This document shows, piece by piece, positions 40,542-60,151 of a stretch of 64,000 nucleotides of DNA; position 1 is the stretch's first letter, and every line of letters starts with the position of its first letter. The stretch is from the IMG/VR virus record IMGVR_UViG_3300027782_000025, positions 62,001-126,000 of that record. One strand, 5' to 3'. Below the pieces are notes generated by a model that had not been told where the DNA came from, made no database searches, and worked only from the letters and a program-made list of their open reading frames with translations. A program made the position numbers and the translations under genes.

Positions 40542-40958
40542 ATGAGAACATTAGAAGTGCTTCTATCGGTTTCAAACAAACCCAAAACCGATAACGGCAT
40601 AGTAAAGACTGATGTTAAATTTTCGTGGCTAGATGGAAGCCCTATACCATTAAGTTTTAATAATCTTTGTGTCATAGGATTAAAAACGCTTTTTAAAAAG
40701 AGAGAAATCGTCGACGGCCCGATAGAAATCATCATGCGTGACATCGCTAATATTGATGAACCGGTTACAAAGATAAACAACATACGGGGAAGACGTTTCT
40801 TCATGACAACCGAAGATAACAAAGCATATTTTTGGCTGTGTAATGGTATAAAAACCGACTTGTTTTTTAATCTGGAAAAAGAGGAGCAAGAGATTTTGAA
40901 TTGGCTCCTGCCCCCTAGAGAAGGCGAAACGAAATGGTTTGATCTTATCGCCTATTAA
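40542..40958 (+). CDS. hypothetical protein
   Basis: ATG 40542 with GGAG RBS (track GTG 40527). Confidence 0.6.
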   Translation: MRTLEVLLSVSNKPKTDNGIVKTDVKFSWLDGSPIPLSFNNLCVIGLKTLFKKREIVDGPIEIIMRDIANIDEPVTKINNIRGRRFFMTTEDNKAYFWLCNGIKTDLFFNLEKEEQEILNWLLPPREGETKWFDLIAY

Positions 40959-42069
40959 CATCAAAATAGAGATCACCATCGGTCACTTTAGACCTATGAA
41001 TAATGTAACCGTTATCCTCTAAATAACTATTTATCGTTACACCAGCGCCTATTCCGTTGTAGCTTATGCAATTTTTATCGAAGATATGAAATGAAAAAAT
41101 TCCATCGCTACCTCTGATTTTACCGTACCAATCTCTAGCAAAATCAAAATTATCAACATGTTTATTAGTAGAATCGTGACATCTTGCACACGACTTGCTG
41201 GTTACCTCTATAAAATCGGCATCATACTTAACCGGCACTATACCAAAGCCTTCTTCGATCGTGACTGTTGTCGGCCCGTCTGATTTGCCATTCCATGATG
41301 TACCGACTGCAGAGCGAAATGGCCTACTCTTTAGTAGACTAGCAGCCTTTTCTTTTGATATGCCGGGAAGAATAATCCTCTGTATTTTAGAACTAAAAAC
41401 CCGTCGATTTGGCTGAGAATCTTCAAGGATCATTGCGTCTTTATTCAGCATATCTGCACCAACATAAAGCCTTACTAACTCATCATCCTTCCTATAATCG
41501 GTAAAATTCTTAACAATTTGTTCGCGTAATTCCGAAGCGCTATTATAAGGCCGCAAAGTGTCAATAATCCATGTCTCTTTGCTCTTGGTACGTGTCCTTA
41601 TTTCGAAGCAATCACCAATTTGGTATAGTATTTCTCCGAACACAGTCCCCCTAGGATATATCCAATTATAACCATCATTGGCTATGTATTCGTATGCTAT
41701 TGGAATGGTTTTACCATCTAATTTAGGAAGGCTCATAAATTTAATAGTCGAGACGCCGTCTGTGCGGTGCGTCCCAGCAGGCTTACCCCATGGGAATTCT
41801 TTATTTCCATTGCCATGCGGCTCTGAGCGATTGGCACTTATGTTATAGATAGGGCTGTGAATACCCCTCAAAGAGCCACGGAAGTCTTGGTACGCCATAG
41901 GTAACGTTTCAGTATCATAGAATCTAATCTGATCAGAGAAGAGTATCTTAGAAAGGCTTTCAGACTCTATTTTTGGTAACCCCAATATGATTTGCTTTGC
42001 TTTGATCTGATCGTAGAAAAAATCCTGCGAAACTGCTGCCGTTACAGCCAGAAAAATAACTCCATACAT
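40945..42069 (-). CDS. exported protein with CxxCH heme-binding motif
   Basis: signal-like MYGVIFLAVTAAVSQ; KSCARCHD; AGGAGG RBS. Confidence 0.65.
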   Translation of the reverse strand: MYGVIFLAVTAAVSQDFFYDQIKAKQIILGLPKIESESLSKILFSDQIRFYDTETLPMAYQDFRGSLRGIHSPIYNISANRSEPHGNGNKEFPWGKPAGTHRTDGVSTIKFMSLPKLDGKTIPIAYEYIANDGYNWIYPRGTVFGEILYQIGDCFEIRTRTKSKETWIIDTLRPYNSASELREQIVKNFTDYRKDDELVRLYVGADMLNKDAMILEDSQPNRRVFSSKIQRIILPGISKEKAASLLKSRPFRSAVGTSWNGKSDGPTTVTIEEGFGIVPVKYDADFIEVTSKSCARCHDSTNKHVDNFDFARDWYGKIRGSDGIFSFHIFDKNCISYNGIGAGVTINSYLEDNGYIIHRSKVTDGDLYFDVNRR

Positions 42070-42100
42070 AATACCGACCTCCTGCTATTAGGCAGGATTG

Positions 42101-42466
42101 TCAGGAATCACTATCCTGATCATCAGACTCCTGCCTCATATCTTTATAATACTCAGCGAAGGCCTTCAAGGCCATGCCGGTGAGGCCATGGATAGGAGCT
42201 ATAAATTCAGCATTGCATATTTCTAGGCGCTCAGCGACTTCAAAGACATCCTTGCCGTTGTCGCTCTTTCCGTTTAATTCGACACCTAATAATTTATATT
42301 TTAATTCTTCTATAATTTCAGTGACATCCTTGCCTACTAAGTTATTTTCCATCTCTACAAGTATTTTACCATTTCTTCCATATAATTTATAATGTATACC
42401 GTATAAATTTGTGGTGGCTTCGATTTCATATTCCTGATACTCTGAATCGTCTTCAGGCTTATCCAT
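42101..42466 (-). CDS. hypothetical protein
   Basis: 121 aa, GGAGG RBS. Confidence 0.65.
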   Translation of the reverse strand: MDKPEDDSEYQEYEIEATTNLYGIHYKLYGRNGKILVEMENNLVGKDVTEIIEELKYKLLGVELNGKSDNGKDVFEVAERLEICNAEFIAPIHGLTGMALKAFAEYYKDMRQESDDQDSDS

Positions 42467-42468
42467 TT

Positions 42469-43887
42469 CTACCTCCAGCTTTCATTTCCTTCTTCTTCGT
42501 CGTCGTCCCCAAGATGGCGTTCATCATCGCCTAATTCTTCGTCGCCATCATTATAGTCTTCCTGATATCCTGCTTCATTTTCGTCATTATCCTCTTCTCG
42601 CATTGATCTTTCGAGCAATTCTATAAGAGCCTGTTCTGTAGTCGTCCCTTTAGATGGACGACCTTCGGCCATATTATCAGCTAGACCCATCATAATGACA
42701 TGTAATTCCTTAGGATGGGCTGACGCCATGTGCATAACCACATGTGCTAGCTTTGATTTATGCTGAGCAGGAATAATAGACAATAATTCCTTCCAGATTT
42801 TAGGTCCGATCTGGATTTGCGGAAATTCGTTCGCCAAAGTATCTGCCAATCTTATAGCTTCTTTAGAAATCTTTTTATCGACATCAGTAAACTGATGCTG
42901 GGCCAATAAGGTCATTAAGCCTTTAACTAATTCTTGTAAGAGAACAGGAAAGCAAGCAGCTTCAGCTTGAACGGTATCGCCTTTCACCTTAGCTGTTCCC
43001 ATCGCCTGTCCTAAAGATGCGCCGAGCATCATATTCAGATCATAAATCCAATAATGATGAGATGCACCTCTGCCAAAAGCCGAATATAATTGTTGCAGCT
43101 CTGGCGATAGGCGGCCAACCGCATCCATCACTTCTTCTTCAAAATGTCCATTGTGCATGTTATGAATAGCGGATCCTTGGGACAGCAGATTCATCATATG
43201 ACGTTTACCAACTTGCTCTTGAAGCTCCGGAGTCATTTGAACCTTCTCATCGCCGCTCTCATTGTCATCATCATTATCATCTGGTTCAGGCTGTGGCTGC
43301 CTTAGAAATGCTTTTAGAGTCTCTTCGGGACATCCGTATAATTTAGCAACTGCTCTTACTGCTATCTTTTCTAACTGTTTTTTAAATGGCTGTTCTAATG
43401 ACATCATTTTCTGTAGTGCTCGACCAGTTAGCTGACCTAATTGCTGGCGCCGGCGATCTGGAGGTAAATCTTTTAATTCTGGAAATGTTTTAAACAAAGT
43501 GCTATTACTGTCATTATAACCTTGTTCTGCTAATTTAGAACCATGCTTTTTAACCATTTCATGGTCTGTAAATGATACGCCTGGGTGGCCCTTTTCCCAC
43601 ATTTCTTGTGTTCTTGGATGTGTGAACTCACGATATGCTTCATTAATAATGGTCTTTTTAAAGGCTTTTGGCTTTGGTTTAACGTCTGGTGCAGGATTTT
43701 TAAAAGGGTTTTTGGTAGGACTCTCACTTGGCGGAGCTTTAGGCACTATGACCGGTGCTGTTGCTGGGCCAGAAGAGCCCATTGCTTCATCATCATCTTC
43801 ATGCTTTTTTGTAGGATCTGCAAAGACATTTGGATCTTCAGTTAAAAATTTAGCGATGTCATTAACGTCATACTTATCATTCTTCAT
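42469..43887 (-). CDS. helical phage protein with acidic linkers, probable internal head protein
   Basis: 472 aa; FLTED and IINEAY near N-terminus; acidic tail. Confidence 0.6.
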   Translation of the reverse strand: MKNDKYDVNDIAKFLTEDPNVFADPTKKHEDDDEAMGSSGPATAPVIVPKAPPSESPTKNPFKNPAPDVKPKPKAFKKTIINEAYREFTHPRTQEMWEKGHPGVSFTDHEMVKKHGSKLAEQGYNDSNSTLFKTFPELKDLPPDRRRQQLGQLTGRALQKMMSLEQPFKKQLEKIAVRAVAKLYGCPEETLKAFLRQPQPEPDDNDDDNESGDEKVQMTPELQEQVGKRHMMNLLSQGSAIHNMHNGHFEEEVMDAVGRLSPELQQLYSAFGRGASHHYWIYDLNMMLGASLGQAMGTAKVKGDTVQAEAACFPVLLQELVKGLMTLLAQHQFTDVDKKISKEAIRLADTLANEFPQIQIGPKIWKELLSIIPAQHKSKLAHVVMHMASAHPKELHVIMMGLADNMAEGRPSKGTTTEQALIELLERSMREEDNDENEAGYQEDYNDGDEELGDDERHLGDDDEEEGNESWR

Positions 43888-43916
43888 ATCATACTCCGTT
43901 GCTAATGGTTAAATTA

Positions 43917-44357
43917 TTAAGACCTTATGGTATTATTAAACCTCTTATATAATTTATCCATCATAGCCATATAGGTATCTTTTCCACCAAGTGTCAGACG
44001 GACGATGTCTGAATCATCTACAATCCCGCCTCGGTCTGGGAAGTATTCCTCACAAGCCACGGTTTCTTCATGGGCATAAAAAAGGTGGGGAACGAGAGAC
44101 GGCACAACCAGCTTATTGCCATCGGTTAAAATGTGATGCTTCTTTTCCGGACCATAAAATTCGATGATTTCTAAATTACCTGTCTTTACTACGAATTCAT
44201 TCGATCGGTGAGTATGATAGTGCAAAGAACAATAACCACCTTTTTCAATATTTAATAGATGCTTACTATATCTCTGACAGGTAAAAACTACATCCGTGTT
44301 TCCCCATATCTTGTTGTTTTCATACCCATCATATAAATAGTAAGGAATTTCTGACAT
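43917..44357 (-). CDS. cupin (mannose-6-phosphate isomerase-like)
   Basis: KIWG...CSLHYH...EFVVKTG...PSLVPHLF. Confidence 0.8.
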   Translation of the reverse strand: MSEIPYYLYDGYENNKIWGNTDVVFTCQRYSKHLLNIEKGGYCSLHYHTHRSNEFVVKTGNLEIIEFYGPEKKHHILTDGNKLVVPSLVPHLFYAHEETVACEEYFPDRGGIVDDSDIVRLTLGGKDTYMAMMDKLYKRFNNTIRS

Positions 44358-44379
44358 TATGATCTCCTGCCAAAAGATA

Positions 44380-44616
44380 TTATCTATTTATCAACGTAGG
44401 TGTCTTGCTATTAGCAGAGGCTAACTGCTCTATTTTTTTGACCATTTGCCCAGCGTTTCTAGCATATCGTCGTTTTATTTCACCAACACGCCCATCGCCT
44501 GTTAAATACTGATAAATGTTACCGTTAGGAAAAGCGATCTTTACTTTTCCTGTGCCATCCCAATAGATCATGGTCGGCTTGGCGATACTAGTTTCTAATA
44601 ACATACTAATTTTCAT
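44380..44616 (-). CDS. small protein, KTSC-like N-half
   Basis: IYWDG...VKIAFPNGNIYQY; starts MKISMLLE. Confidence 0.5.
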   Translation of the reverse strand: MKISMLLETSIAKPTMIYWDGTGKVKIAFPNGNIYQYLTGDGRVGEIKRRYARNAGQMVKKIEQLASANSKTPTLINR

Positions 44617-44630
44617 TATGATTTACCATT

Positions 44631-45662
44631 TTAGTAATCTCTATCCTTTTTTTGCTTAGATGACTGGACCAAGATTTCCCTTGCTAAATCTCCAGCACTA
44701 TGTATGTCGGCTGAATTTATATCAGCCGCTAGCCCATATATGTTAAATAATATCGAGCCAGTGCCTACTGGCCTCACATCTTTGATGCTTCGATAACCAT
44801 CAATAATTTGCTTATCAGCCAAATAAGAATACATCTCACCAATGTGTTTGATCTCTGACATCTGATCTAAACTAAACTCCATTATTATTTCCTGCCTATA
44901 GTTATTATAGAATCTAATGCTATCTTCTGTAAATTGGATACCTCCGCCACCGGTTTCAAAGACCGCTACATTATAAACCCTATTAAATTCATTGTCATCG
45001 ATCTGCAATTTAAACCCGCCTCCAAAGTCTCGCCACCTATAAGATATAGCCTCATCGTTTAAAAATCTCATACCATTAATGTAATTTGCATATTTCGGAT
45101 AATCTACCGTCACCTCGTTAGTGGTCCTTTTCGCGAATTCATCGAGGTTTTGTGGTGTGGTTAAGTCTTCTATGGCTGTTCGCACTATGAAACCATTCGG
45201 CCTTAATACATCGATGTTTTTAGGGGTGACTGTAATGATTCGTTTAGGATCTCCTTTTTGGGCGCCATTAACAGGTAGTTTTAACTTATCACTCAACACG
45301 AATTTTTTAAAACTTGCCCAATCGGTCGAACCTTTTGTAGCTGCCATTTTGGCTTTAGCTTGATCTATACTTAGTAACCTCTTTTGCTCATGCTCTTGTA
45401 CTTCACGAGCTAGTTTCTGTTCCGCTTCTAAAGCCGCATCGAGATCTTCTTGAGTCCGAGCATATTTTAGAATAGCTTCCTTTTCCCATAATATAGAGTT
45501 TATTAGTGAGCTAATATTCTCGTCCGCCAAGCTATGGTTTCCGGTATCTCTAAAATCTATCGCCCTCTCTAACTTATCTAGCATTTGGGCCATACCGGCT
45601 TTAAGGCGGTCCAAGTCATGCCTGCTTATCGTAGCTTCTGTAATGATTTGTTTTATTTTCAT
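44631..45662 (-). CDS. hypothetical protein, probable internal head protein
   Basis: starts MKIKQIITEA; coiled-coil N-half. Confidence 0.65.
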   Translation of the reverse strand: MKIKQIITEATISRHDLDRLKAGMAQMLDKLERAIDFRDTGNHSLADENISSLINSILWEKEAILKYARTQEDLDAALEAEQKLAREVQEHEQKRLLSIDQAKAKMAATKGSTDWASFKKFVLSDKLKLPVNGAQKGDPKRIITVTPKNIDVLRPNGFIVRTAIEDLTTPQNLDEFAKRTTNEVTVDYPKYANYINGMRFLNDEAISYRWRDFGGGFKLQIDDNEFNRVYNVAVFETGGGGIQFTEDSIRFYNNYRQEIIMEFSLDQMSEIKHIGEMYSYLADKQIIDGYRSIKDVRPVGTGSILFNIYGLAADINSADIHSAGDLAREILVQSSKQKKDRDY

Positions 45663-45672
45663 AGTTAATTCT

Positions 45673-47562
45673 TTAGACTAAAGCCTCCAAACGTTGAATC
45701 CGTCTCAATCGCCTTGTCGCGATTTGCCGAGTGTCTTGATGCGTGCTTTGGGATAGCTGTAATAATGTCTCTTTATCTCTTGTCTCTCGCGCTATATCGA
45801 TTTGCGTGATTTCATCGTATGAATTTATATTTAAAATAGTCTGAATTAATATTCTTACTGCCCTTACTGTCTTTTGATCAGCAAACCTGCTGCTATTGAC
45901 TGCAGGCAAATTATCATAAATATATCTCAGTTGCTCATGTTCGAGGCTAAGTATAATTTTAAGGACATTGTTTAAGGCATTCGAAAATAAATTTTCACCA
46001 GATCTCATATGCCTGCTGTTTAAACATGGCGCTATTATTCTTGCCATATCGATAGAGTTTTGTTTTGAAGCAATAATGCTATTATTTTGCGCGATTTTAT
46101 AATAATATTCTATGAACTTCATCGCCATATTAGAGAATACCTCTTCATTATATGTCTCACTAAAACACATATCCGAGTATAACTTATATAAATCATTTAT
46201 AGGAATGCAATATAGAATCGTCTCAGGATATAGGCCATCTCTCGCATCGCCGACAGAACCATCGGCTGCAGCTTTACATATGTGCTCGGCATAGGGCGTT
46301 AAAGCACTGCTCACAGCATTAAAATTTGAAAGCGCTAAAACGTATCTTCTGTATAAAAGATGAAACTCAGAAATTGGTAGTTTTAAAATCGTCTCTAGAA
46401 ATGATTCTGGGTCATAAACACTACGATATGATGCTAAGCATGCATTGTCAGTACCAGCCAGCTCTAACCATTGGCCTTGCCCTATCCCTTTAGATTCAAA
46501 TGCGGCATAATTACTAATCATTTTATTATAAAGTTTAAGCTGATACCCAGTACCAGTCAACCTAGTGTAAATGCTCTTTAATGTGGTATACCTCAGATTA
46601 CTTATGTCCATTTCTAATATTTGAGACATATTGTCACCGATTAACTTTAGTAAGATTTCATCAGCTTTATCTTCAGACATGAATTTTGAAAATCGGTTAA
46701 AATATTCTTTATCCCAATCAATTCGGTCTACGAATTTTGCGACATATTTCGTGTTCTCTTCTAAAATCTTTAAAAAATCATCTCCTGTCACCTTATAATC
46801 AGTAGTAACCAACCAATCGAGAACAGCTTTCTGATATTTTGGAACTGGCTGTCTATTTTGTCTACCTTTTATTTCAGATATTTTATTATAATCGATAATT
46901 CTTATATCGACAAATGGTCTATTACTAGCATTTCTCATACTCATCACCGACTGGCCCTTGGTATCGAATATATATGATCTGATACAATTCTGCATTAGTT
47001 TTCCTTCTAACTCTGCATCATCCCTATGGAGCGGTACAAAGAACCACTGACCAATCTGGACTGTACCCTCTGTTTCGATACCATGTTTATGAACACCGTA
47101 ATTGGCTGAAATATTTTGTATTCTTTCATGCCATTCCTGAGAGCTAGCCATGGCTCTTTCTAATGATAGATCCTTTACATCCTCTAAGTCCATCTCATTC
47201 GCTTCGAAATAATCAAATATTCCATTTTCTATTGGGACTTCATCTTGAGCTTCTTTCCATACCTTTAAAATCCACTGATAGTATCTCCGGCTTAGTTCTT
47301 GGGCTCTCTTTTGCATCTGTTCATATCTAATGTGGCCTTCGGACTTCTGGGTTTGCTTAGCAAAAGGATCTAAGTCTTGGACTAAAGAAATGGCTTCAGG
47401 CGTGATTTCTGTGATTACATTTGTAGCAAGACCGAATAGTAATTTTTCGGCGTTTTTAGCATCTATGTTTATAGCGGCATTAATATTAGCTTCGCCTACT
47501 TGTTCGCCATATTTTTTGTTTAAATAATTAAATTGGCTTTCTAATATTATCGACAAATTCAT
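45673..47562 (-). CDS. PcfJ-like domain protein, probable internal head protein
   Basis: SQEWH...LEGKLMQNCI...SMRNASNRPFVDI...EIKGRQN; starts MNLSIILES. Confidence 0.7.
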   Translation of the reverse strand: MNLSIILESQFNYLNKKYGEQVGEANINAAINIDAKNAEKLLFGLATNVITEITPEAISLVQDLDPFAKQTQKSEGHIRYEQMQKRAQELSRRYYQWILKVWKEAQDEVPIENGIFDYFEANEMDLEDVKDLSLERAMASSQEWHERIQNISANYGVHKHGIETEGTVQIGQWFFVPLHRDDAELEGKLMQNCIRSYIFDTKGQSVMSMRNASNRPFVDIRIIDYNKISEIKGRQNRQPVPKYQKAVLDWLVTTDYKVTGDDFLKILEENTKYVAKFVDRIDWDKEYFNRFSKFMSEDKADEILLKLIGDNMSQILEMDISNLRYTTLKSIYTRLTGTGYQLKLYNKMISNYAAFESKGIGQGQWLELAGTDNACLASYRSVYDPESFLETILKLPISEFHLLYRRYVLALSNFNAVSSALTPYAEHICKAAADGSVGDARDGLYPETILYCIPINDLYKLYSDMCFSETYNEEVFSNMAMKFIEYYYKIAQNNSIIASKQNSIDMARIIAPCLNSRHMRSGENLFSNALNNVLKIILSLEHEQLRYIYDNLPAVNSSRFADQKTVRAVRILIQTILNINSYDEITQIDIARETRDKETLLQLSQSTHQDTRQIATRRLRRIQRLEALV

Positions 47563-47627
47563 GTTTATATCCTTCTTTCAAAACCTTTTTGGCTATTTTA
47601 TCACGATACTGCGTGACCTGACGCACA

Positions 47628-48176
47628 TTACTTTACGTCTGATAGACCTAATCTTCGCGCCATAGCTTCTTTATTAGATTCATTCGGATGCATAGCTGCC
47701 GCTTGATTGCTACCAAAGCTAGCCATATTTTGTTGGTAATACGCTTCAAATTCCTCGATAGAACAAATGCCTTGTTGCTCTCCCTGCGCTGTTTTTATTC
47801 TATAAGTGACTCCTTCATCATCTGCGACCCACTTCGCGGACGGCGAATTAAAAATCTCAGGAAATGATAACTTTGTCTCTTTAATTTCGTCTTTATCCCA
47901 CGACATATTTTTTAAATATTTTTCTTTAAATTGCTTGACCATTTCGGAGTTAATATGCGGTAAAAAGAATTTCTGGTATATTGGTAGAAAATTATTGACA
48001 TGAGCAACACCATTCTGGTTGCCTTGTTGACTAATTATTTGATATTGGATCTCTCCGTCAGGTCCGATGAAATACTTGCCAAAAGCACCGTAGGCTAGTG
48101 GTGGAAATTTAAGAGACTCGATATCTATCGTTTCCGAAAGTAGCTTTTTTTCATGCAAAATAGACGATATATTCAT
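47628..48176 (-). CDS. hypothetical protein with internal duplication, probable internal head protein
   Basis: ATG 48176 MNISSILHEKKLLSET (track GTG 48209); two ~35-aa repeats. Confidence 0.6.
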   Translation of the reverse strand: MNISSILHEKKLLSETIDIESLKFPPLAYGAFGKYFIGPDGEIQYQIISQQGNQNGVAHVNNFLPIYQKFFLPHINSEMVKQFKEKYLKNMSWDKDEIKETKLSFPEIFNSPSAKWVADDEGVTYRIKTAQGEQQGICSIEEFEAYYQQNMASFGSNQAAAMHPNESNKEAMARRLGLSDVK

Positions 48177-48261
48177 TATAAAGATCCGATAAAACAAATG
48201 AAATTTCACTACTTATTTATCTTTTCTTGTAGTTAATTAACGCAAGCAGATACTAGTATAC

Positions 48262-48298
48262 AAAAAAACCCGAGCTTTGCGGCTCGGGTTCTTTTTTT
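48262..48298. terminator. bidirectional intrinsic terminator downstream of major capsid gene
   Basis: AAAAAAACCCGAGC-tttgcg-GCTCGGGTTCTTTTTTT. Confidence 0.9.
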
Positions 48299-48325
48299 AA
48301 CCGATTCTTGTTAAAGAACCAAGTC

Positions 48326-49900
48326 TTAGAGGTTAGAAACGTTGATCACACCGTAGTACAAGCCACCGTCTTCGATCAACTTCTTACCATATCGGGTCAT
48401 GATGCCCTTGTTAGGTGTGAAGCTATTAGGATCAAGAACAGTAGGAGTGCTAAGCAAAGGAATGTAAGGAGCATAGAAATAACCCGCATCCAATACACTA
48501 TTACCCTTGAAGCCGAGCAAGATCTTGCAATTAGGGAAGAGAGGATCTTTATAGAGCCTGATCTTGCCTTGGATGGTACCAATGTTCATGATACCGATAT
48601 CAATGCCATCGGTTGTAAGAGCATCGCTTGCACGGAAATCGTTAAGCTGCTCAAACTTGGAAGCGATATCGGAACTCATAACAGCCCAGTTAGCAGGACC
48701 ACGAAGAGTGGTTCTGTGGATAATGTTCGCAACTTCGAGTGTCTTATAAAGCAACGCGATGTTACGATCAGTAAAGTTAACTGAAGCTCCAGCTGCAGTG
48801 GCGAAGTTATGGGTAGCACGAATCGAAGAAGCGATAATCAAGTCATTGATAATTTCGCGGTCGATTTCTGCAACCATTTCGTCAGCCATTAAATCAGTCA
48901 AGGTGCTCTCAGCATCAATGTTATGCACTGATTTGAGATCTTGAGCAGCTTCTAATGACCAGCTGGTCTTAAGCTTGCGGGTAACAGCAGCAACGCTATC
49001 ACTGTCAATGCTCAAGGTTACTTCTGGCTGGAATGGGTTAGCTTCGAGATCGTACTCATAATTAACGCGTGCTACGGACCCAGTTGGGAACGAGCCGGAT
49101 TGCAATGATACGGTTACAACTCCGGTGCTGTGATTGAAAGAGGAATTGCCGGTATCAACAGCAAGAATGCTGGTGAAATCGGTGCAATCGCCGATCAAAA
49201 CCACATCAACCGCGCCAGTAGAGTCAAAACCAACTCGGAGGCAAGGTGTTGGATCATCACAATTAGGGTTTGCTGCTGCTTCGCTAGGGAAGACTTCTAC
49301 AACCACGGTGCCAGCAAGAACTGGACGATGACTCAAAGTACCGCTAACACCAGTAAGCGAACCATTGATGGTCGCGTCTTCACCCTTAACTTCTTGGGAA
49401 GAATAATAAGGATCAAGTGCCCAGCCATTATTTCGTGAGAAATTTTGAGCTGTGTTTTGGCGCATGATCTGGGTGCCAGCTACCGTTTGGCCTTTAGTAA
49501 GAGCATAACGATACCTGATGTAGAAAATCAAACTAGCTGGTTGACTCATGGGCTGAACACCAACAAGGTTATCAGCGATAAGTTTAGGATAGGATTTTCG
49601 GATGAGGGGCAATGCAAAGCGAGTAAAGTCCGCAATGTTTGCAGTGGTGGTTTGATCTTCGAGAATCATCGATCGGTTGCCTGGGTTCCAAGCATTGAAT
49701 TGATTTTCGAGGATAGACGCCATAAGGCCGAATTTGCTCTTCGCAACTTCACGGCACTTGGAAAGAACTGGAGTCCATTTCTTTACCAAGGTGTTTTTAC
49801 GACCTTCGTTGAGCACTGCTGCTCGGTGAAGATCGGCAGATTCGGTGATAAAACGGTTTTGGCCGCCGGCCAAGTGTTGGCCATTAGACTTATTCAACAT
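48326..49900 (-). CDS. major capsid protein (T4 gp23-like)
   Basis: KWTPVL, LENQ, LIADNLVGVQPMSQP, TRKLKTSWSLEAAQDL, EIDREII, DAGYFYAPYIPL, GIMTRYG. Confidence 0.97.
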   Translation of the reverse strand: MLNKSNGQHLAGGQNRFITESADLHRAAVLNEGRKNTLVKKWTPVLSKCREVAKSKFGLMASILENQFNAWNPGNRSMILEDQTTTANIADFTRFALPLIRKSYPKLIADNLVGVQPMSQPASLIFYIRYRYALTKGQTVAGTQIMRQNTAQNFSRNNGWALDPYYSSQEVKGEDATINGSLTGVSGTLSHRPVLAGTVVVEVFPSEAAANPNCDDPTPCLRVGFDSTGAVDVVLIGDCTDFTSILAVDTGNSSFNHSTGVVTVSLQSGSFPTGSVARVNYEYDLEANPFQPEVTLSIDSDSVAAVTRKLKTSWSLEAAQDLKSVHNIDAESTLTDLMADEMVAEIDREIINDLIIASSIRATHNFATAAGASVNFTDRNIALLYKTLEVANIIHRTTLRGPANWAVMSSDIASKFEQLNDFRASDALTTDGIDIGIMNIGTIQGKIRLYKDPLFPNCKILLGFKGNSVLDAGYFYAPYIPLLSTPTVLDPNSFTPNKGIMTRYGKKLIEDGGLYYGVINVSNL

Positions 49901-49919
49901 TAAAAAATTCTCCTCAGAA

Positions 49920-50648
49920 TTAGATTAGGTTCTCGTCAAGATTAGCCGCAATGCTATTGATATTATAACCACCGGCAACAATAGCTGGTTGCTTAGGTGG
50001 AGTGGATGGGTCTTGGCTTTCTACTAATGTTGGCCTGGTGGTAGTAGGGTTTTGGGAAAGACTCTTCCTTGGCAACAGGTTAGGCCTGCTTGCTTTGGGA
50101 GCTCTATTCTCAGTAACCGTCTTAGTACCAACCAACATACGTTTGAGTCTGATATTCTCAGATTCAAGTCCCTGTGATTCAGCTAGAATTTTGCGAGCAA
50201 TAGAAGTCTGCTTGTTCGCTAGTTCATTGGCCTTATCGCAGGATTCAACAAGTTGCCTAATTTTGGCTTTTGCAGCTTCAAAACTAGTCTTCAGCTTGCC
50301 ATCGTTTCCAACATTCAGCTCGATGCCTTCTACTAGAGCGGCAATTTTATTGAGCTTGCTGGTACTTTTGGACTCTGAAGATACTGACTGCTTTCGAAGC
50401 TGAGCTTCGATAGCGGCACCCTTGGTTTCACAGAATATTTGTACGCGTCGAGCCAAATCACGTTTGTACGTTTCGGTTTCTTCAACGCAAATCTTTTTGG
50501 CCTTGCTAATCTTGGTGACAAATTCTGCCTCCAAAGATTCTTTGATAGTTGATTTGTAAGATTCTAAGGATTCGATGATCCTACCAGTAAATTCTGGTTG
50601 AACTCCAGCTTTTTGCAACAAATCTTTTAATTCAGCGATAGCTTCCAT
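49920..50648 (-). CDS. prohead scaffold protein (gp22-like)
   Basis: coiled-coil, between protease and MCP, multiple [IL]-x-E-S sites. Confidence 0.7.
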   Translation of the reverse strand: MEAIAELKDLLQKAGVQPEFTGRIIESLESYKSTIKESLEAEFVTKISKAKKICVEETETYKRDLARRVQIFCETKGAAIEAQLRKQSVSSESKSTSKLNKIAALVEGIELNVGNDGKLKTSFEAAKAKIRQLVESCDKANELANKQTSIARKILAESQGLESENIRLKRMLVGTKTVTENRAPKASRPNLLPRKSLSQNPTTTRPTLVESQDPSTPPKQPAIVAGGYNINSIAANLDENLI

Positions 50649-50699: not shown

Positions 50700-51422
50700 T
50701 TACGAAAGACCGAAAAATTTATTAATCTCTTCAACCACCATGTTTTGGTAAACAGACGGCGAAAATTTCTTTTTCATAGCCTTTAATGGAGTCATTCTTT
50801 TTTTAAGATCCTCTTGGATATTAAGAATAGCACCATTAACGCTAGGCTCAGCCACAGCATCCCAAGTCACGAATGTGTAGCCTGGTAAAACCCTATAAGT
50901 CTCTTGGCCATTGCTTTCGCTAACTACTTCCATATCGCCAACACCACGAGAGCTGATGCCGACTCTCACTTTATGTTCGAATAGGCCACGCAAGCAAGCA
51001 CCGCAAGGTAATTTATGAAGTATCTCTGCTTCACCAAAAACCTTTCGTCCTTCCATCCAGACATTCGTCATTAGATGGCTAACTCTATCAAGGTGAATTT
51101 TAGCATCACTAGGATGATCGAATTCGCCAAGTACTGCTCTAGCCTTGATATCTTCTTGGATTTGCTTGATAGCTGGCGCTAAGACTTCATTGGTCGAATA
51201 ATAGCGACCATTGCCGTTAGGTTGATCGCCCATCTGGATAAGACCTGTCACTCGTAGAACTGGAGTACCATTTCCATTGCGATCTTCCCTGATAGCATTC
51301 TTCTTATCTAAGATTTTAAATTCATGAGTATCCCTGATCAGCTTCATGCCGGCAGGGATTACTCCTGTTTCTGCGATTACTCTTCGATTCTGAAAACACG
51401 ATGTTCTTCGACTAGGTATCAT
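50700..51422 (-). CDS. prohead maturation protease (T4 gp21-like)
   Basis: NGNGRYY, LGEFDHP, RVSH, GISSRGVG, TWDAVAEPS; ATG 51422 with GGAG RBS (track 51452). Confidence 0.95.
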   Translation of the reverse strand: MIPSRRTSCFQNRRVIAETGVIPAGMKLIRDTHEFKILDKKNAIREDRNGNGTPVLRVTGLIQMGDQPNGNGRYYSTNEVLAPAIKQIQEDIKARAVLGEFDHPSDAKIHLDRVSHLMTNVWMEGRKVFGEAEILHKLPCGACLRGLFEHKVRVGISSRGVGDMEVVSESNGQETYRVLPGYTFVTWDAVAEPSVNGAILNIQEDLKKRMTPLKAMKKKFSPSVYQNMVVEEINKFFGLS

Positions 51423-51432
51423 TATTTGCTCC

Positions 51433-54400
51433 TTAAAGGTCAATATTGTCAAGATCGTCGCGATCGCCGATTCCCTCGACTGATTCGTCGTTCTTACGCT
51501 TGTTGACCTTCGGTTTTACATCTGTGCGTGGGTCTTCTTCGGCTTGTTTATGATACTTGGGCTTGCTAGGGTCCGTAATATCATTATCTTCATTAAGACC
51601 GTCGAAATCTTCGTCTTCGTCCTCAGTATCGATGTTGTCATCGTCCGACTCGTCTTCATACTCTTCATCATCGGCCGATTCATCATCCGCATATTCTTCA
51701 CCGTCAGCGAGTTCATCACCGTCCTCGATGGCTTCGTCATCCATTGACTCACCGCCATCAATTAGTTCCTCATCACCAAATTCATCATCGAGATCTTCTT
51801 CTTCCATTCCGGACATTTCCATGTCGTCATCTTCGATGTCTGAAGCATCCATATTCATTTCATCATCGCTTTCAAGACCCAATTCATCCTTAATCTCGTC
51901 GATTTCATCATGAATGCTATCAATTTCAGCTCTCATTTCATGGTCTGATCCACCTTCATCGCCGTATTCGTCTCCGCCTAGTTCGAGATCTAATGAACTC
52001 ATGTCGCCATCGGAGCCATCTTCGAGGCCATCTTCTTCGCCGGCCATGTCATCAGTGCTTTCAAACTCATCTTCGCCACCAATTTCGTCGGCGTCATCAA
52101 GGTCGCCTTCGCCTTCAAGATCTTGATCTACATCGCCCATGTCGACTCCTTCTTCGTCGTCGACAGCCGAAAAATCAGGCATATCTTCTTCCTCCGAAGG
52201 CGATGATATGGAAGGCTCAGTAGCTTCTACAGGTTTCATTGCATCAATTTCTTCTTCGAATTCTTCATTTAAAAAGTTTCGTTCAGATTCGGAGATTGGT
52301 GAAAGCTGGTCGATACTACCTGCTAACCACTCACGAAATAATGAAGAATTTCCTTTGATTACCCTAGCAGCAGCTAAAGCACTATTTTGAACTTTTTTAG
52401 GAACGGGTATTTCGACTGTTCCGTCTTCTGACATAACGACTGCAGGTAATTCTGCATTACCATGGTCAAGAGCAAACTTGGCGCCATTGAAGACCCCATA
52501 AAGGACATCGCCGTTTTTAGAAGTCCAGCGGATAGCGTTTTCGCTTACTGGCTTTGCAGCCTCTTCATTTTTCTTACCAGCCTTGCCAAATGAATTTCTG
52601 CTTAGCCCGCGTTTTCGCATTATCGGGGATTTCCTCTGGCTTTCCTTGACTGCAGCCCGAGTGTTTTGGTAAGTGTCGACTATTTGATTAACAGCTAGAG
52701 GAAGCATAGATTGATTTAGATTCAAAACGACCTTTCGAATGCAAGATTCAACGATCTTGGGAAGTCCTTTTACCAATTGTTCATTGGTCAAATTATTAGC
52801 TATTACATGCCTGTCGACCATCTTAACTATCATTTGGATCTTTGAATTATCATTAATCGCAGTCTTACCATATTGACCCATTATAGCTCTATCGCCTTTG
52901 GAAACATTGTAGGCATACTGATCAGTAGATTCGTTTATCGGTCGTTTATTTTTATTACGGCTTTCTAGTCTTGGGGGGCCACCTGGGGCTGCGCCTGGAG
53001 CTGGTGCTGCACCTGGGGCTGCGCCTGGAGCTGGTGCTGCGCCGGGAGCGGGAGCTGCACCAGGGGCTGGTGGTGCGCCGGCTGTAGGTGGCTCGTCGAG
53101 TAGTGCAGATAAATCATCTTCGCCGCCGGCTTCGTCTGGCATGCCAAGATCGTCTTCACCTTCTTCACTTGCTGCTGAACTCTTCCCGCCGATTTGAATC
53201 AGAGGAGAATTAATATTTATAACTGGTGCGCCCGAAGGAGCTTCTTCCTCTTCGGTATCGACTTCTGGCAGCCCAGAATCAGTGGTATTTGGCATTTGAT
53301 CGAAATCCGCAAGATTTTCATTCGAAGTCACTTCCTCTTGGATAGTGGCTATCAAATCTTCCGCTTCATAAATCGTTGCATCATCAACAGCCTTATCTTT
53401 CAGCTTGTTTATTAAGCCGTCGAGCTTACTCTTTAATTCATGGTTTTCCATGATTCTAGGAGTCTTATCTCTTAGCTGGCTTAAAGTAGTCGCAAGCGCT
53501 TCCGCAGCTATTTCTCTGTTTCCGATGGTTTCAAAAATAAGGTCCAAGAATTTATTATAAACTGGTTCGAATTCCTGAGCTTCAGATAATATAGCAACAT
53601 TCTGTGCAAGATTATAATTTTCAACAGCGCTTGCAATATTCTTCCATTCTTTAACGATCTTGCTGCGATTTACTCGCAGGTTCGTCTTATGGAATAATGT
53701 CGCCACATCTTCACATAATTGTGGGTTAAAGATCGCCTTTGCTGCAAGTGCGTTAGAAACGAGTTCTTTGGTTTGCGATCTATTCAAGAGAGTAAATTCT
53801 TCGTACTCTTCTAAAAATGGTGCAACCAAATTAACCGCTTTGTCTACATTACCTTCGGATATCAAAGAGGCAACATCATAAATGCGCCCTTGAAAACCTT
53901 GGCTAAGATATGCTTCCATCGCTACTTTACGCATAGTCTTTGCTGTTAACTTCTTAGTAGCCCATTTTGAAACGGGCAGATTAAACTGTTCGCCATCAAT
54001 GAAATGGCCACCAATAGCGTGATTATCTTCAACAATCACTCTGGTAGAAATCGATTCTACCACACAAGCAACGATTTTTTTCTTGATGTCTTCGTTAATT
54101 TGTTCTGGAGTTCTTACCTTAATACGGCGCACAACGCCGTCTTTACTGCAAACCATCCCAGATTCTGGGATAACGCGGCCGGTAAAGCGTTGAGCCTTCA
54201 TACGTCCAAAAGTAGATTGCATACCCTTTTGGTCATTCCGTTCAATAGCGTTAATCAAACGCAAGCATGATTCTTCGAAAAGACCAGCTTTTTGACTTTC
54301 TACTATAGAGATAGGTTGAATATCGGTGATATTTATTGCACCATGTGACTTATGGTGTTTAGCGATATAAAAGGTGTTAGATCCTACATCTTCGATGTAA

Positions 54401-54576
54401 AGATCTTTCGAATAAAGCGCAGCCAAGCGCCAGTTTTTATTTGTTGCCTTGCCTAGTTCCTTAACTTTAGATTCAAAAAAAGCTACTTTAGCCTGAGCTG
54501 AATCGTTAAGGGCTCCCAAGAACTTTCGGCTATCCATTCGGATTGGACTAAGCGCTTTGTTCTGGTTCTGAGCCAT
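51433..54576 (-). CDS. large acidic prohead core protein
   Basis: 1047 aa between portal and protease; long D/E tract; many [ILV]-x-E sites; PA linker. Confidence 0.6.
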   Translation of the reverse strand: MAQNQNKALSPIRMDSRKFLGALNDSAQAKVAFFESKVKELGKATNKNWRLAALYSKDLYIEDVGSNTFYIAKHHKSHGAINITDIQPISIVESQKAGLFEESCLRLINAIERNDQKGMQSTFGRMKAQRFTGRVIPESGMVCSKDGVVRRIKVRTPEQINEDIKKKIVACVVESISTRVIVEDNHAIGGHFIDGEQFNLPVSKWATKKLTAKTMRKVAMEAYLSQGFQGRIYDVASLISEGNVDKAVNLVAPFLEEYEEFTLLNRSQTKELVSNALAAKAIFNPQLCEDVATLFHKTNLRVNRSKIVKEWKNIASAVENYNLAQNVAILSEAQEFEPVYNKFLDLIFETIGNREIAAEALATTLSQLRDKTPRIMENHELKSKLDGLINKLKDKAVDDATIYEAEDLIATIQEEVTSNENLADFDQMPNTTDSGLPEVDTEEEEAPSGAPVININSPLIQIGGKSSAASEEGEDDLGMPDEAGGEDDLSALLDEPPTAGAPPAPGAAPAPGAAPAPGAAPGAAPAPGAAPGGPPRLESRNKNKRPINESTDQYAYNVSKGDRAIMGQYGKTAINDNSKIQMIVKMVDRHVIANNLTNEQLVKGLPKIVESCIRKVVLNLNQSMLPLAVNQIVDTYQNTRAAVKESQRKSPIMRKRGLSRNSFGKAGKKNEEAAKPVSENAIRWTSKNGDVLYGVFNGAKFALDHGNAELPAVVMSEDGTVEIPVPKKVQNSALAAARVIKGNSSLFREWLAGSIDQLSPISESERNFLNEEFEEEIDAMKPVEATEPSISSPSEEEDMPDFSAVDDEEGVDMGDVDQDLEGEGDLDDADEIGGEDEFESTDDMAGEEDGLEDGSDGDMSSLDLELGGDEYGDEGGSDHEMRAEIDSIHDEIDEIKDELGLESDDEMNMDASDIEDDDMEMSGMEEEDLDDEFGDEELIDGGESMDDEAIEDGDELADGEEYADDESADDEEYEDESDDDNIDTEDEDEDFDGLNEDNDITDPSKPKYHKQAEEDPRTDVKPKVNKRKNDESVEGIGDRDDLDNIDL
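52981..53040. repeat. 30-bp perfect tandem repeat x2 (AAPAPGAAPG)
   Basis: acctggggctgcgcctggagctggtgctgc twice. Confidence 0.9.
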
Positions 54577-59224: not shown

Positions 59225-59718
59225 ATGTCATCATTTTCGCCTAGTGGTTGGCTTAAAATTCTTTCTAGCATGTTCGAATCAATTCCAGCGCTAACAGTAT
59301 TTTGCTGAATATTGATGCTAGACTTGGTAGCGGCCAAAGTTTTAGCGTTAGCTTCGATCATTTTAACGGCCGTAGTATTAATATTCGACTTTACTTCGAT
59401 CGCCTTTACAAGCGATTCAATTATACCAGTAGACAATTTAGAGCCTGTTCCGATAGCACTTTCTACTTGATCGCGCAACATGTTTATAAGATCTTGAGTT
59501 TCAGCCCGATCTGCCTTGCATGCCTTTAAAACATCATCAGTAACATCATCTAACCTACGCAAGTATTTGGTTATATCGACAGCTTCTGGTTCAACGCTTG
59601 CGTTATTAGGATTTAATGTAGATATAACATGTGGGGCTACATTGGCTAAGTCTAGTGTAGAGGGAACTTGGTCGCTGGCCTTGTCTAAATCTCTAAATAA
59701 ATCATTTAGTTCTGTCAT
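59221..59718 (-). CDS. putative terminase small subunit
   Basis: 165 aa helical protein directly upstream of and coupled to TerL; 'NIQQNTV' C-terminal strand. Confidence 0.55.
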   Translation of the reverse strand: MTELNDLFRDLDKASDQVPSTLDLANVAPHVISTLNPNNASVEPEAVDITKYLRRLDDVTDDVLKACKADRAETQDLINMLRDQVESAIGTGSKLSTGIIESLVKAIEVKSNINTTAVKMIEANAKTLAATKSSINIQQNTVSAGIDSNMLERILSQPLGENDDI

Positions 59719-60151
59719 CCGATTTTTCCTCGGCGTTTTTATCTATCAACGACACTGATAAATTAGAAGATGCTAACTTTTCATGCAATTCTGTCACAGT
59801 AATCTTCTGGTCATCTATCAATTTTAACAATTTATCGAGTTTACCTTCAGTATGGACAGTATTGGCTTTTTTGCGTTGTGTCCTTGTGCTCTTTTTATGT
59901 GCTTGCTTGGTAGCTCCATGACTCATTTGGTCAATGGGCTTTTTTTTGGGGTGCACTCTTCCAGCAAGATCAAATGGCTTTACCCTGCTATGTCCAGTCG
60001 GATTATCGATCCTGTTCTTTTTGCCGACTCTAGTTCGTCTGCGTACTCTTTCTATAACTGAGCCGCCCATAGATTCAGCTATAAAACTATTAAATTCTTC
60101 CAAGGTTAATGACTGATCAGCGATTTTTTCTACTATTAGATCGTATTTCAT
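59702..60151 (-). CDS. basic hypothetical protein
   Basis: 149 aa; LIVE / FIAES sites then Arg/Lys-rich core. Confidence 0.6.
   Translation of the reverse strand: MKYDLIVEKIADQSLTLEEFNSFIAESMGGSVIERVRRRTRVGKKNRIDNPTGHSRVKPFDLAGRVHPKKKPIDQMSHGATKQAHKKSTRTQRKKANTVHTEGKLDKLLKLIDDQKITVTELHEKLASSNLSVSLIDKNAEEKSDDRTK

What the first reader, a model, noticed from the sequence alone, without database searches (positions are those of the whole stretch)
42469..48176. Shared N-terminal capsid-targeting-like signature on a run of unrelated genes: an injected protein payload
Seen: four consecutive, otherwise unrelated genes just downstream of the MCP terminator start MNISSILHE/LLSE|T (48176), MNLSIILE|S (47562), MKIKQIITE|A (45662) and MKISMLLE|T (44616). 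Related starts occur at 43887 (IAKFLTE|D), 60151 (MKYDLIVE...FIAE|S), 16992 (MNINE|N), 25628 (IIFE|A), 27553 (VLKE|A) and 29918 (RISE|N). The MCP has FITE|S and MILE|D. Established: T4 internal proteins carry a ~10-aa N-terminal capsid-targeting peptide ending in [IL]-x-E that gp21 removes. Inference: a set of cargo proteins (PcfJ-like, KTSC-like, gp2-like, sigma-like) is loaded into the head and delivered with the DNA, possibly for anti-defence or host takeover.
Basis: partly seen in the sequence, partly recalled or inferred. Interest (0 to 1): 0.72.

Follow-up and report, generated by a model that had tools for sequence, protein, structure and literature searches.

The report
Capsid-targeting-like leaders on huge-phage cargo genes
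In an uncultured freshwater huge phage with a T4-type head, four unrelated genes right after the capsid gene start with the same 8-16-residue tag ending in a T4-type protease site. This most likely marks them for loading into the phage head, as in T4, and could let a phage's packaged proteins be read from sequence.

Summary
Four consecutive minus-strand genes after the major capsid gene start MNISSILHE..LLSE|T, MNLSIILE|S, MKIKQIITE|A and MKISMLLE|T. The strict pattern is expected 0.01 times per genome. In a leave-one-out test each leader ranks 2nd of 248 N-termini. The four proteins are otherwise unrelated.

The phage is a 274.6-kb IMG/VR contig from a large freshwater clade. It has a T4-type head module: intein-bearing portal, S77 gp21-like protease, scaffold and gp23-like capsid protein. 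The capsid propeptide site [IL][ILF]E|D is conserved in 45 distinct relatives.

Homologues down to about 27% identity keep the leader and the Glu. Ten further unrelated proteins in relatives carry it, against 0.3 expected.

A second, longer leader (..IAxLITEDPDVLxE) sits on the 472-aa gene in the cluster and on 13 proteins of a 395-kb relative.

The cluster is accessory and mosaic, like the T4 internal-protein loci.

Best reading: T4-style capsid-targeting propeptides removed by the prohead protease. Packaging, cleavage and injection are inferred, not shown.

Of the functional labels, only PcfJ-like has even weak support among the cluster genes.

This is a new variant of a known kind.

The parts
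54637..57135 (-). Portal protein (gp20-like, 832 aa) carrying an intein. It is the first gene of the head operon, and the late-promoter-like motif TAAATATA lies 33 nt upstream.
   Evidence: Pfam Portal_T4 E 2.9e-66 and Intein_splicing E 2.8e-9. Motif.
51433..54576 (-). 1047-aa acidic, low-complexity protein between portal and protease. It is conserved across the clade and is a candidate prohead core or internal protein. It has 21 [IL]xE sites.
   Evidence: No family hit. Homologues in all four complete relatives. pI 4.3.
50700..51422 (-). Prohead protease, T4 gp21 type (peptidase S77). Its own N-terminus carries a conserved ..[IV]IAE|T site.
   Evidence: Pfam Peptidase_S77 E 3.3e-15; phrog_207 E 7e-39. 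N-termini of 35 relatives.
49920..50648 (-). Scaffold-like coiled-coil protein (242 aa, starts MEAIAE|L). It has 8 [IL]xE sites against 4.2 expected.
   Evidence: Position between protease and MCP as in T4 gene 22. Site count.
48326..49900 (-). Major capsid protein, gp23 type (524 aa). It has an N-terminal propeptide with FITE|S and the maturation-type site MILE|D about 40 residues before GVQPM.
   Evidence: Pfam Gp23 E 1.9e-78. Alignment to T4 gp23. Site conserved in 45 distinct relatives.
48267..48290 (-). Terminator-like hairpin after the MCP gene, conserved in the near relative L002.
48212..48219 (-). TAAATAAG, a 6-of-8 match to the late-type motif TAAATATA, 43 nt upstream of the first cargo gene. 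A possible weak late promoter (inference).
47628..48176 (-). Cargo candidate 1 (182 aa, no family). Leader MNISSILHEKKLLSE|T (nt 48129-48176). The gene is absent from near relative L002 as a precise indel (47562..48206).
45673..47562 (-). Cargo candidate 2 (629 aa). Leader MNLSIILE|S (nt 47539-47562). N-terminal helical part with a PcfJ-like alpha/beta core (about residues 163-270), and a C-terminal HEAT/ARM-type solenoid.
   Evidence: Pfam PcfJ E 1.9e-4, below cut-off. Model pLDDT 80.6 and fold hits. Homologues keep the leader.
44631..45662 (-). Cargo candidate 3 (343 aa, no family, no fold match). Leader MKIKQIITE|A (nt 45636-45662), disordered in the model.
44380..44616 (-). Cargo candidate 4 (78 aa; mature part 70 aa, pI 10.2, the only one resembling T4's small basic internal proteins). 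Leader MKISMLLE|T (nt 44593-44616).
   Evidence: KTSC hit only E 0.24.
43917..44357 (-). Cupin-fold protein (146 aa) inside the cluster, without a leader.
   Evidence: Pfam Cupin_1 E 2e-6; phrog_7851 E 5.4e-14.
42469..43887 (-). 472-aa acidic protein with the second leader type: MKNDKYDVNDIAKFLTE|DPNVFAD (nt 43837-43887).
40945..42466 (-). Two further genes of the same tightly packed cluster (121 aa acidic; 374 aa) with no leader and no family.
59702..60151 (-). 149-aa basic protein (pI 10.1) next to the terminase genes, starting MKYDLIVE|K ... EEFNSFIAE|S. A weaker leader candidate.

Best explanation
The shared N-termini are capsid-targeting propeptides of the T4 kind. The genes are probably made late with the head proteins. 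The short amphipathic leader (M-[KN]-[IL]-x-x-[IL]-[IL]-x?-E, or the longer ..IAxLITEDPxV.. form) would give the protein affinity for the scaffold core of the assembling prohead. The gp21-type protease would then cut after the Glu of the [IL]-x-E site and release the mature protein inside the head. From there it can leave with the DNA at infection.

The set behind the capsid gene is an accessory, exchangeable cargo locus, analogous to the T4 ipI/ipII/ipIII and alt loci.

Shown here:
- the leader exists, is non-random and is conserved under selection;
- it sits on unrelated proteins;
- the phage has the T4-type protease and a capsid propeptide site of the same form;
- the locus is variable and mosaic.

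Inferred:
- binding to the core;
- cleavage at the marked Glu;
- presence in virions;
- ejection into the host;
- any anti-defence or takeover function.
For: 1. T4-type head machinery: S77 protease, gp23-type MCP, gp20-type portal.
2. The MCP maturation-type site [IL][ILF]E|D is invariant in form across 45 distinct relatives and lies where T4 gp23 has FLTE|A. The protease's own N-terminus has a conserved IAE|T site.
3. T4's processed head proteins, read from NC_000866, have the same architecture: ipII/ipIII MKTYQEFIAE|A, gp24 MAKINELLRE|S, gp22 MLKEQLIAE|A, gp67 MEGLIE|A, Alt MELITE|L.
4. Enrichment: strict pattern 4 observed against 0.01 expected; leave-one-out ranks 2 of 248 four times.
5. 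Conservation of the leader with divergent mature parts:
   - g121 family: MNLSIILE / MNISLILE / MLISSLILE (35% identity);
   - g120 family: MKIKQIITE / MKIREILLE / MKINNIINE, and ..QRLIEE|A at about 27% identity;
   - g119 family: MKISMLLE / MKIISIIE at 31% identity.
6. The same leader occurs on 10 other distinct proteins within 10 kb of the MCP in relatives, against 0.3 expected.
7. A distant phage contig (L169) has six neighbouring genes with ..ILLE|A..VILE|D..LLLE|A..SITE|D..LILE|N and ..MIAE|H leaders.
8. The second leader is on 13 proteins of complete relative G002 against 0.63 expected. In G005 it is on a gene between protease and scaffold.
9. The locus behaves like the T4 IP loci. The cargo genes are absent from four complete relatives. 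The 182-aa gene is a precise indel. An extra 110-aa gene with an identical leader is present in L172.
10. dS between the window and L002 jumps from 0.13 (MCP) to 1.9 or saturated (g121, g120) and back to 0.13 (g119).
11. None of the genes behind the early-type promoter motif carries the leader.
12. The leader of g120 is disordered in the model.
13. Published basis: the first 10 residues of IPIII suffice for packaging, and T-even internal proteins are diverse apart from the CTS (PMC9026906, PMC3012670).
Against: - There are no virion proteomics, N-terminal data or culture.
- The leaders share architecture, not sequence, with the T4 CTS.
- Three of the four mature proteins are acidic to neutral and large (166-621 aa, pI 5.4-5.7), unlike T4's small basic IPs, though Alt is also large.
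- A hairpin terminator separates the cluster from the MCP, and the putative promoter is only a 6-of-8 match.
- Two complete relatives (G003, G004) show essentially no shared leader, so the system is not uniform in the clade.
- One leader-like hit (genome 238217-238786) sits in a sugar-metabolism operon.
- dN/dS is below 0.2 everywhere, so there is no gene-wide sign of positive selection.
- The protease-leader complex prediction gave no verdict.
Confidence: 0.6

Rival explanations
1. The leaders are protease-removed propeptides of structural or assembly components of the head (core, vertex, decoration or inner-body-like proteins). On this reading they are not a payload delivered to the host. 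The proteins would stay in the capsid or be degraded, as T4 gp24, gp22, gp67 and gp68 are.
For: T4 structural proteins gp24, gp22 and gp67 have the same kind of short [IL]xE N-terminus. The scaffold-like protein here starts MEAIAE|L. A type B leader gene lies between protease and scaffold in G005. g121 is a large HEAT-repeat protein that could be architectural.
Against: The leader-bearing genes are accessory. They are absent from four complete relatives that keep all core head genes. They are present or absent between near-identical phages and mosaic in dS. That is not expected of essential structural parts.
Confidence: 0.2
2. The shared N-terminus is a signal for another destination or process, independent of the prohead protease. 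Candidates are membrane or assembly-site recruitment, tail or baseplate incorporation, a chaperone tag or a degron.
For: No direct link between leader and protease was shown, and the complex prediction gave no verdict. Type B leader genes in G002 are scattered over the genome. One type A-like hit is in a sugar-metabolism operon.
Against: Every leader ends in, or contains, the same [IL]-x-E form as the conserved MCP maturation site. The Glu is the most conserved leader position in homologues. The gene position is directly behind the head operon.
Confidence: 0.1
3. The similarity is a by-product of nucleotide-level constraints. These could be A/T-rich codons after the start codon for efficient translation initiation, or a conserved DNA junction used for cassette recombination, with no function for the peptide itself.
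For: M-K/N-I/L starts are common in this 40% G+C genome. The 182-aa gene indel ends exactly at the next gene's ATG, where both genes read ATGAAT.T.TCG. L172 has two genes with an identical type B leader.
Against: The four leaders use different codons and are no more alike in DNA than in protein. The constraint extends to residues 6-9 including Glu, and is kept in homologues of 27-45% identity. Interior and position-specific nulls give 0.01-0.3 expected. Recombination at the leader would complement a peptide function rather than replace it, as proposed for the T-even IP loci.
Confidence: 0.05

Closest known systems
Phage T4 capsid targeting sequence (CTS) of internal proteins IPI/IPII/IPIII, and the Alt propeptide (Mullaney and Black 1996; reviews PMC9026906, PMC3012670)
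   Same: - Short N-terminal leader ending in [IL]-x-E on otherwise unrelated proteins.
- gp21-type S77 protease and gp23-type capsid protein in the same genome.
- Variable, exchangeable accessory loci.
- T4 leaders read here: MKTYQEFIAE|A (ipII, ipIII) and MELITE|L (Alt).
   Different: - The leader sequence is different: MK[IL]Sx[IL][IL]xE, with no Y/Q/F core.
- Cargo genes are clustered directly behind the capsid gene.
- Cargo is mostly large and not basic.
- The phage is a huge phage; complete relatives are 354-408 kb, and MCP identity to T4-like phages is only about 29%.
- A second, longer acidic leader (..IAxLITEDPDVLxE) has no T4 counterpart beyond the LITE core.
- Nothing here is experimentally shown.
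Phage P1 Dar antirestriction system (DarB N-terminal capsid targeting signal; PMC9024508)
   Same: An N-terminal signal (the first 30 residues suffice) directs a large accessory protein into the head for delivery with the DNA. The cargo is large and non-structural.
   Different: There is no sequence relation. P1 loading is stepwise and depends on other Dar proteins. P1 lacks a separate scaffold system. No shared short leader across many cargo proteins is described there.
phiKZ / 201phi2-1 / SPN3US giant-phage head proteolysis and ejection proteins (PMC9026906, PMC5694885, PMC10052503)
   Same: Huge phages in which many head-internal and ejected proteins carry propeptides. A gp21-related protease cuts these after Glu.
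   Different: As summarised in PMC9026906, those sites all lie C-terminal to Glu with very few other determinants, and many of their propeptides contain multiple sites. Their capsid and protease are only distantly related to T4's. Here the head module is plainly T4-type and the leaders are 8-20 residues.

Membership tests
T4-type CTS-bearing internal head proteins | The genome encodes a gp21-type (S77) prohead protease and a gp23-type capsid protein with a cleaved propeptide. | tested here: met
   Pfam Peptidase_S77 E 3.3e-15, Gp23 E 1.9e-78. Propeptide site conserved. Cleavage itself is not shown.
T4-type CTS-bearing internal head proteins | N-terminal leader of about 10 residues ending in [IL]-x-Glu. 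| tested here: met
   Leaders of 8, 9, 8 and 16 residues. The Glu is invariant in homologue alignments.
T4-type CTS-bearing internal head proteins | The leader is shared by proteins that are otherwise unrelated. | tested here: met
   No BLASTP hit among them at E 1e-3. Leave-one-out rank 2 of 248.
T4-type CTS-bearing internal head proteins | Leader sequence similar to the T4 CTS (MKTYQEFIAE). | tested here: not met
   Only M1, K2 and the [IL]-x-E end are shared. Same architecture, different sequence.
T4-type CTS-bearing internal head proteins | Small basic mature proteins (IPI-III are about 8-20 kDa). | tested here: not met
   Mature 166, 621 and 334 aa with pI 5.4-5.7. Only the 70-aa product is basic (pI 10.2). 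T4 Alt is also large, so this feature is not universal.
T4-type CTS-bearing internal head proteins | Locus is variable between related phages. | tested here: met
T4-type CTS-bearing internal head proteins | Protein present in virions with the leader removed; leader sufficient to package a reporter; protein ejected with the DNA. | not testable with these tools
   Uncultured phage, no proteome. The complex prediction gave no verdict.
PcfJ-like proteins (PF14284), for the 629-aa gene | Score at or above Pfam's gathering cut-off (25 bits). | tested here: not met
   21.7 bits, E 1.9e-4, covering profile positions 66-146 of 147. Residues 163-270 of the model match a 128-aa AlphaFold DB protein at TM 0.67 and 30% identity. 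It is a probable distant relative but is not filed as a member.
KTSC domain (PF13619), for the 78-aa gene | Significant match to the family profile. | tested here: not met
   E 0.24, 11.6 bits against a cut-off of 25.

The most novel reading that the evidence does not exclude
This clade of freshwater huge phages may use at least two distinct, portable N-terminal address tags to load a large and rapidly exchanged set of proteins into the head. They are the 8-9-residue MK[IL]Sx[IL][IL]xE tag and the roughly 20-residue ..IAxLITEDPDVLxE tag, the latter on at least 13 proteins in one 395-kb genome. If so, the injected proteome of uncultured huge phages could be read directly from sequence. The two tags might specify different sub-compartments, copy numbers or release timing. 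In a distant relative some cargo continues with a twin-arginine-like motif right after the cut site, which would imply onward export in the host.
Probability: 0.3. Interest if true: 0.75.

Novelty: new variant of a known kind. Interest (0 to 1): 0.55.

Why it matters
If the leaders are genuine head-loading tags, they give a sequence-only handle on which proteins uncultured huge phages deliver with their DNA. That class includes the known anti-restriction and host-takeover factors of T4 (IPI*, Alt) and P1 (Dar). The cargo here has no recognisable families, so it would be a pool of candidate first-minute effectors. The tags could also be tested as packaging signals for foreign proteins, as was done with the T4 CTS. 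The finding extends a mechanism documented for T-even phages, and for P1, to a distant, abundant environmental clade, and adds a second leader type.

Tried and rejected
- Complex prediction of the protease (29-row alignment) with residues 1-40 of the 629-aa protein: score 0.02, 'no answer'. This is evidence neither for nor against.
- Family searches for the cargo proteins (Pfam, PHROGs, PDB sequences, ESM Atlas) gave nothing usable except the weak PcfJ hit and LRV/HEAT leads.
- Fold search of the 343-aa model found no match.
- Single-protein scans of IMG/VR with the 629-aa and 343-aa proteins found only the near relative L002.
- An all-against-all N-terminal BLAST clustering at E 0.5 was too noisy to use because of single-linkage chaining. 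It was replaced by reduced-alphabet k-mer, regex and leave-one-out tests.
- Bare [IL]xE near the N-terminus as a criterion was rejected as being at chance level.
- Gene-wide positive selection was not found; dN/dS is below 0.2.
- Exact T4 late promoter TATAAATA: the enriched upstream motif here is TAAATATA, and the cargo cluster has only a 6-of-8 match.
- Literature search for the type B motif strings found nothing relevant.
- Metatranscriptome contigs: a few 99+% identical pieces cover g121, g122 and the MCP at similar low depth in one lake RNA library. DNA carry-over cannot be excluded and contigs have no strand, so this is only weakly supportive.
- No alternative genetic code was needed. 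All genes are open under table 11.

Full report
**Where the window lies.** The window is bases 62001-126000 of a 274,625-bp IMG/VR virus contig estimated about 70% complete. By capsid protein it belongs to a large clade of uncultured phages. The contigs and RNA runs that hold it come from lake and freshwater samples. Eighty related loci were fetched with MCP identity of 73-100%, including complete genomes of 354-408 kb. The nearest deposited record is a 595-kb uncultured phage at 37% MCP identity. T4-like isolates are at about 29%.

**The head module.** The genes lie on the minus strand in this order:
- terminase large subunit (57254-59224);
- a gp20-type portal with an intein (54637-57135);
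- a 1047-aa acidic protein (51433-54576);
- an S77 gp21-type prohead protease (50700-51422);
- a scaffold-like protein (49920-50648);
- a gp23-type major capsid protein (48326-49900).

A terminator-like hairpin follows the capsid gene. Behind it is a tightly packed run of genes of 182, 629, 343, 78, 146 (cupin), 472, 121 and 374 aa.

The first four genes of that run start MNISSILHEKKLLSE|T, MNLSIILE|S, MKIKQIITE|A and MKISMLLE|T.
- I called 256 genes on the whole contig. Under position-specific N-terminal composition the strict pattern is expected 0.01 times. It occurs four times, all adjacent, and never at interior positions.
- A profile built from any three of the leaders ranks the fourth 2nd among 248 N-termini. 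The first rank is always another gene outside the window (genome 58154-59584, MKLSILYE|S, 476 aa).
- The four proteins have no BLASTP similarity to each other.
- The four leaders use different codons. The constraint is therefore on the peptide.
- A bare [IL]xE ending at residue 8 or 9 is not enriched: 13 observed against 8.8 expected.

**Why a T4-type capsid-targeting propeptide is the best reading.**

*The processing machinery is present.* The capsid protein has a conserved site of the same form. In 45 distinct relatives the sequence just before the conserved mature start DQTTTANIADF is [MVIL][IL][LF]E|D. This lies about 40 residues before GVQPM, where T4 gp23 has FLTE|A. The protease's own N-terminus has a conserved IAE|T.

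*T4's processed head proteins have the same architecture.* These were read here from NC_000866:
- ipII and ipIII: MKTYQEFIAE|A;
- gp24: MAKINELLRE|S;
- gp22: MLKEQLIAE|A;
- gp67: MEGLIE|A;
- Alt: MELITE|L.

The literature states three relevant points (PMC9026906, PMC3012670). The first ten residues of IPIII suffice for packaging. Residues 4 and 7 matter for targeting, and residues 8 and 10 for cleavage. T-even internal proteins are diverse apart from the CTS.

*The leader is conserved where the rest diverges.*
- 629-aa family: MNLSIILE, MNISLILE or MLISSLILE down to 35% identity.
- 343-aa family: MKIKQIITE, MKINQILKE, MKIREILLE. The most distant members have MKINNIINE|A and ..QRLIEE|A at about 27% identity.
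- 78-aa family: MKISMLLE and MKIISIIE at 31% identity.
- 182-aa family: E9 is not conserved (most homologues read H-K). The conserved site is [IL]L[SI]E at residues 15-16, so the leader is probably 16 residues.

*The tag is portable.* Ten further distinct, unrelated proteins within 10 kb of the MCP in relatives begin MKL..[IL][ILYF]E, against 0.3 expected. A contig of a more distant phage that carries a 35% homologue of the 629-aa protein has six neighbouring genes with these leaders:
- MSYIKKLDILLE|A;
- MSYFNDILGVILE|D;
- MSYINELDLLLE|A;
- ..MMDSITE|D;
- MLISSLILE|N;
- MKLNAMIAE|H.

**A second leader.** The 472-aa gene in the cluster starts MKNDKYDVNDIAKFLTE|DPNVFAD. This belongs to a distinct family with consensus ..IAx[LFM][IL][TS][ED]DPxV[LFV]xE.
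- In the complete 395-kb relative G002, 13 otherwise different proteins carry it at the N-terminus, against 0.63 expected.
- In G005 one such gene lies between the protease and the scaffold gene.
- In L172 an extra 110-aa gene with an identical leader sits beside the 478-aa one.
- The core LITE matches T4 Alt's MELITE.
- Where the first acidic residue is Asp, a downstream [LFV]xE is usually present. According to the T4 literature, Asp at that position blocks cleavage but not targeting.

I found no description of this motif in the searched literature. That search covers only open-access text.

**The locus behaves like an accessory cargo locus.**
- None of the type A cargo genes has a homologue in four complete relatives that keep portal, the 1047-aa protein, protease, scaffold and MCP.
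- Against the near relative L002, identities are: MCP 100%, protease 98%, the 629-aa protein 79%, the 343-aa protein 70%. The 182-aa gene is missing as a precise indel that ends at the next gene's ATG.
- Synonymous divergence jumps from 0.13 (MCP) to 1.9 or saturation (629-aa and 343-aa genes) and back to 0.13 (78-aa gene). This points to allelic exchange by recombination rather than uniform fast evolution.
- dN/dS stays below 0.2, so all of these are functional genes under purifying selection.
- The slot directly after the MCP varies. It holds the 182-aa gene (window, L172), nothing (L002) or a 484-aa Mom-family gene without a leader (L170). In most other relatives it holds unrelated 480-730-aa genes.

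**Expression context.**
- A motif TAAATATA is enriched upstream of genes, including the portal gene that heads the head operon.
- A different motif, TTTGTTACAGG ... ACACTTTTTAGGAG, precedes small genes at the left end of the contig.
- I read these as late-type and early-type promoters by analogy with T4. This is inference.
- No gene behind the early-type motif has the leader.
- The cargo cluster has only a 6-of-8 match (TAAATAAG) 43 nt upstream of its first gene.
- One lake metatranscriptome holds 99+% identical contigs over the 629-aa gene, the 182-aa gene and the MCP at similar low depth. DNA carry-over cannot be excluded.

**What the cargo is.**
- 629-aa protein: the model has pLDDT 80.6. 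It has an N-terminal helical part with a small alpha/beta core (residues about 163-270) that corresponds to the sub-threshold PcfJ hit, and a C-terminal HEAT/ARM-type solenoid.
- 343-aa protein: the model has pLDDT 77, with residues 1-9 disordered. It has no fold match.
- 182-aa and 78-aa proteins: no family. Only the 78-aa product is small and basic like the T4 IPs.
'gp2-like' is a weak hit on a gene outside the cluster.

**Limits.** Nothing here shows that the proteins are in virions, that the protease cuts them, or that they enter the host. Two complete relatives show no shared leader. One leader-like hit is in a sugar-metabolism operon. The complex prediction returned no verdict.

**Probabilities.** These are readings of the same leader, so the two sub-cases fall inside the first figure rather than adding to it.
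- About 0.6 that these are prohead-protease-processed head-targeting leaders.
- About 0.35 for the sub-case that the products are delivered effectors.
- About 0.2 for the sub-case that they are structural or core head proteins only.
- About 0.15 together for the two readings in which the leader is not a protease-processed head tag: another destination or process (0.1), or a nucleotide-level constraint with no peptide function (0.05).

**Novelty.** The mechanism is known from T4 and, in another form, from P1 and the phiKZ-like phages. New here:
- its apparent use in a distant, abundant clade of uncultured huge phages;
- a different consensus;
- a cargo cluster placed directly behind the capsid gene;
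- a second, longer leader type present on many proteins.

I rate it a new variant of a known kind.

Noticed in passing
window 42469-43887 (-); G002 = loci L088-L107; G005 110216-110995 (in loci L127-L144): A second shared N-terminal leader, ..IAx[LFM][IL][TS][ED]DPxV[LFV]xE. It is on 13 otherwise different proteins in a complete 395-kb relative (0.63 expected). In another relative it is on a gene between protease and scaffold. It is on two genes of the window's genome. The core LITE equals the start of T4 Alt (MELITE).
   Followed up: partly
window 54637-57135 (-): The portal protein (832 aa against 524 in T4) carries an intein (Pfam Intein_splicing, residues 98-248, 37.4 bits against a cut-off of 35.8). 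In relative G005 the protease gene is 640 aa, which suggests an insertion there too.
   Followed up: no
L169:84-1196 and L169:1787-2920 (+): In a distant phage contig, two paralogous leader-bearing proteins continue right after the predicted cut site with AEGPSRRDFNKS followed by a mildly hydrophobic stretch. This resembles a twin-arginine (Tat) export signal that removal of the leader would expose. It is unexplained.
   Followed up: no
window 47562-48206, compared with L002:3599-3633, L170:4726-6180 and L172:14287-14619: The slot just after the capsid gene and its hairpin is a hot spot for gene gain and loss. It holds the 182-aa gene (window, L172), nothing (L002) or a Mom-family 484-aa gene (L170). 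Most other relatives have unrelated 480-730-aa genes there. T4 has the homing endonuclease segD at the same place.
   Followed up: partly
window 40945-50648 compared with L002: Synonymous divergence is mosaic along the cluster: MCP 0.13, 629-aa gene 1.9, 343-aa gene saturated, 78-aa gene 0.13, 472-aa gene 0.96. This indicates recombination between divergent lineages within a few kilobases.
   Followed up: partly
genome 1-31000 (left of the window); window genes starting at 2393, 9762, 27553, 29918, 40501 and 57135: There are two enriched upstream motifs. TTTGTTACAGG about 20 nt before ACACTTTTTAGGAG precedes small genes at the contig's left end (early-type). TAAATATA lies 13-85 nt upstream of 16 genes, including the portal gene (late-type, compare T4 TATAAATA).
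   Followed up: partly
window 24597-25628 (-): A 343-aa protein with a weak PHROG hit to the DNA end protector (T4 gp2-like; phrog_429, E 8.5e-4). It starts MILNSLTIPGHIIFE|A. The hit is too weak to call.
   Followed up: no
window 51433-54576 (-): A 1047-aa protein between portal and protease. It has a conserved N-terminal roughly 480 residues, a proline/alanine repeat (APAPGAAP...) and a long poly-acidic tail. It is conserved in all four complete relatives and may be a core or inner-body-type head protein.
   Followed up: no
genome 187408-206511 and 242682-271508 (right of the window): There are very large genes (4418, 1944, 1768, 3921 and 1309 aa) sharing repeated domains. Several tail-fibre-like paralogues have related N-termini (MDIGTILRLQGP, MELSTIIRLKV, MSIKIQVRRDT). 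These are paralogy, not the leader.
   Followed up: no
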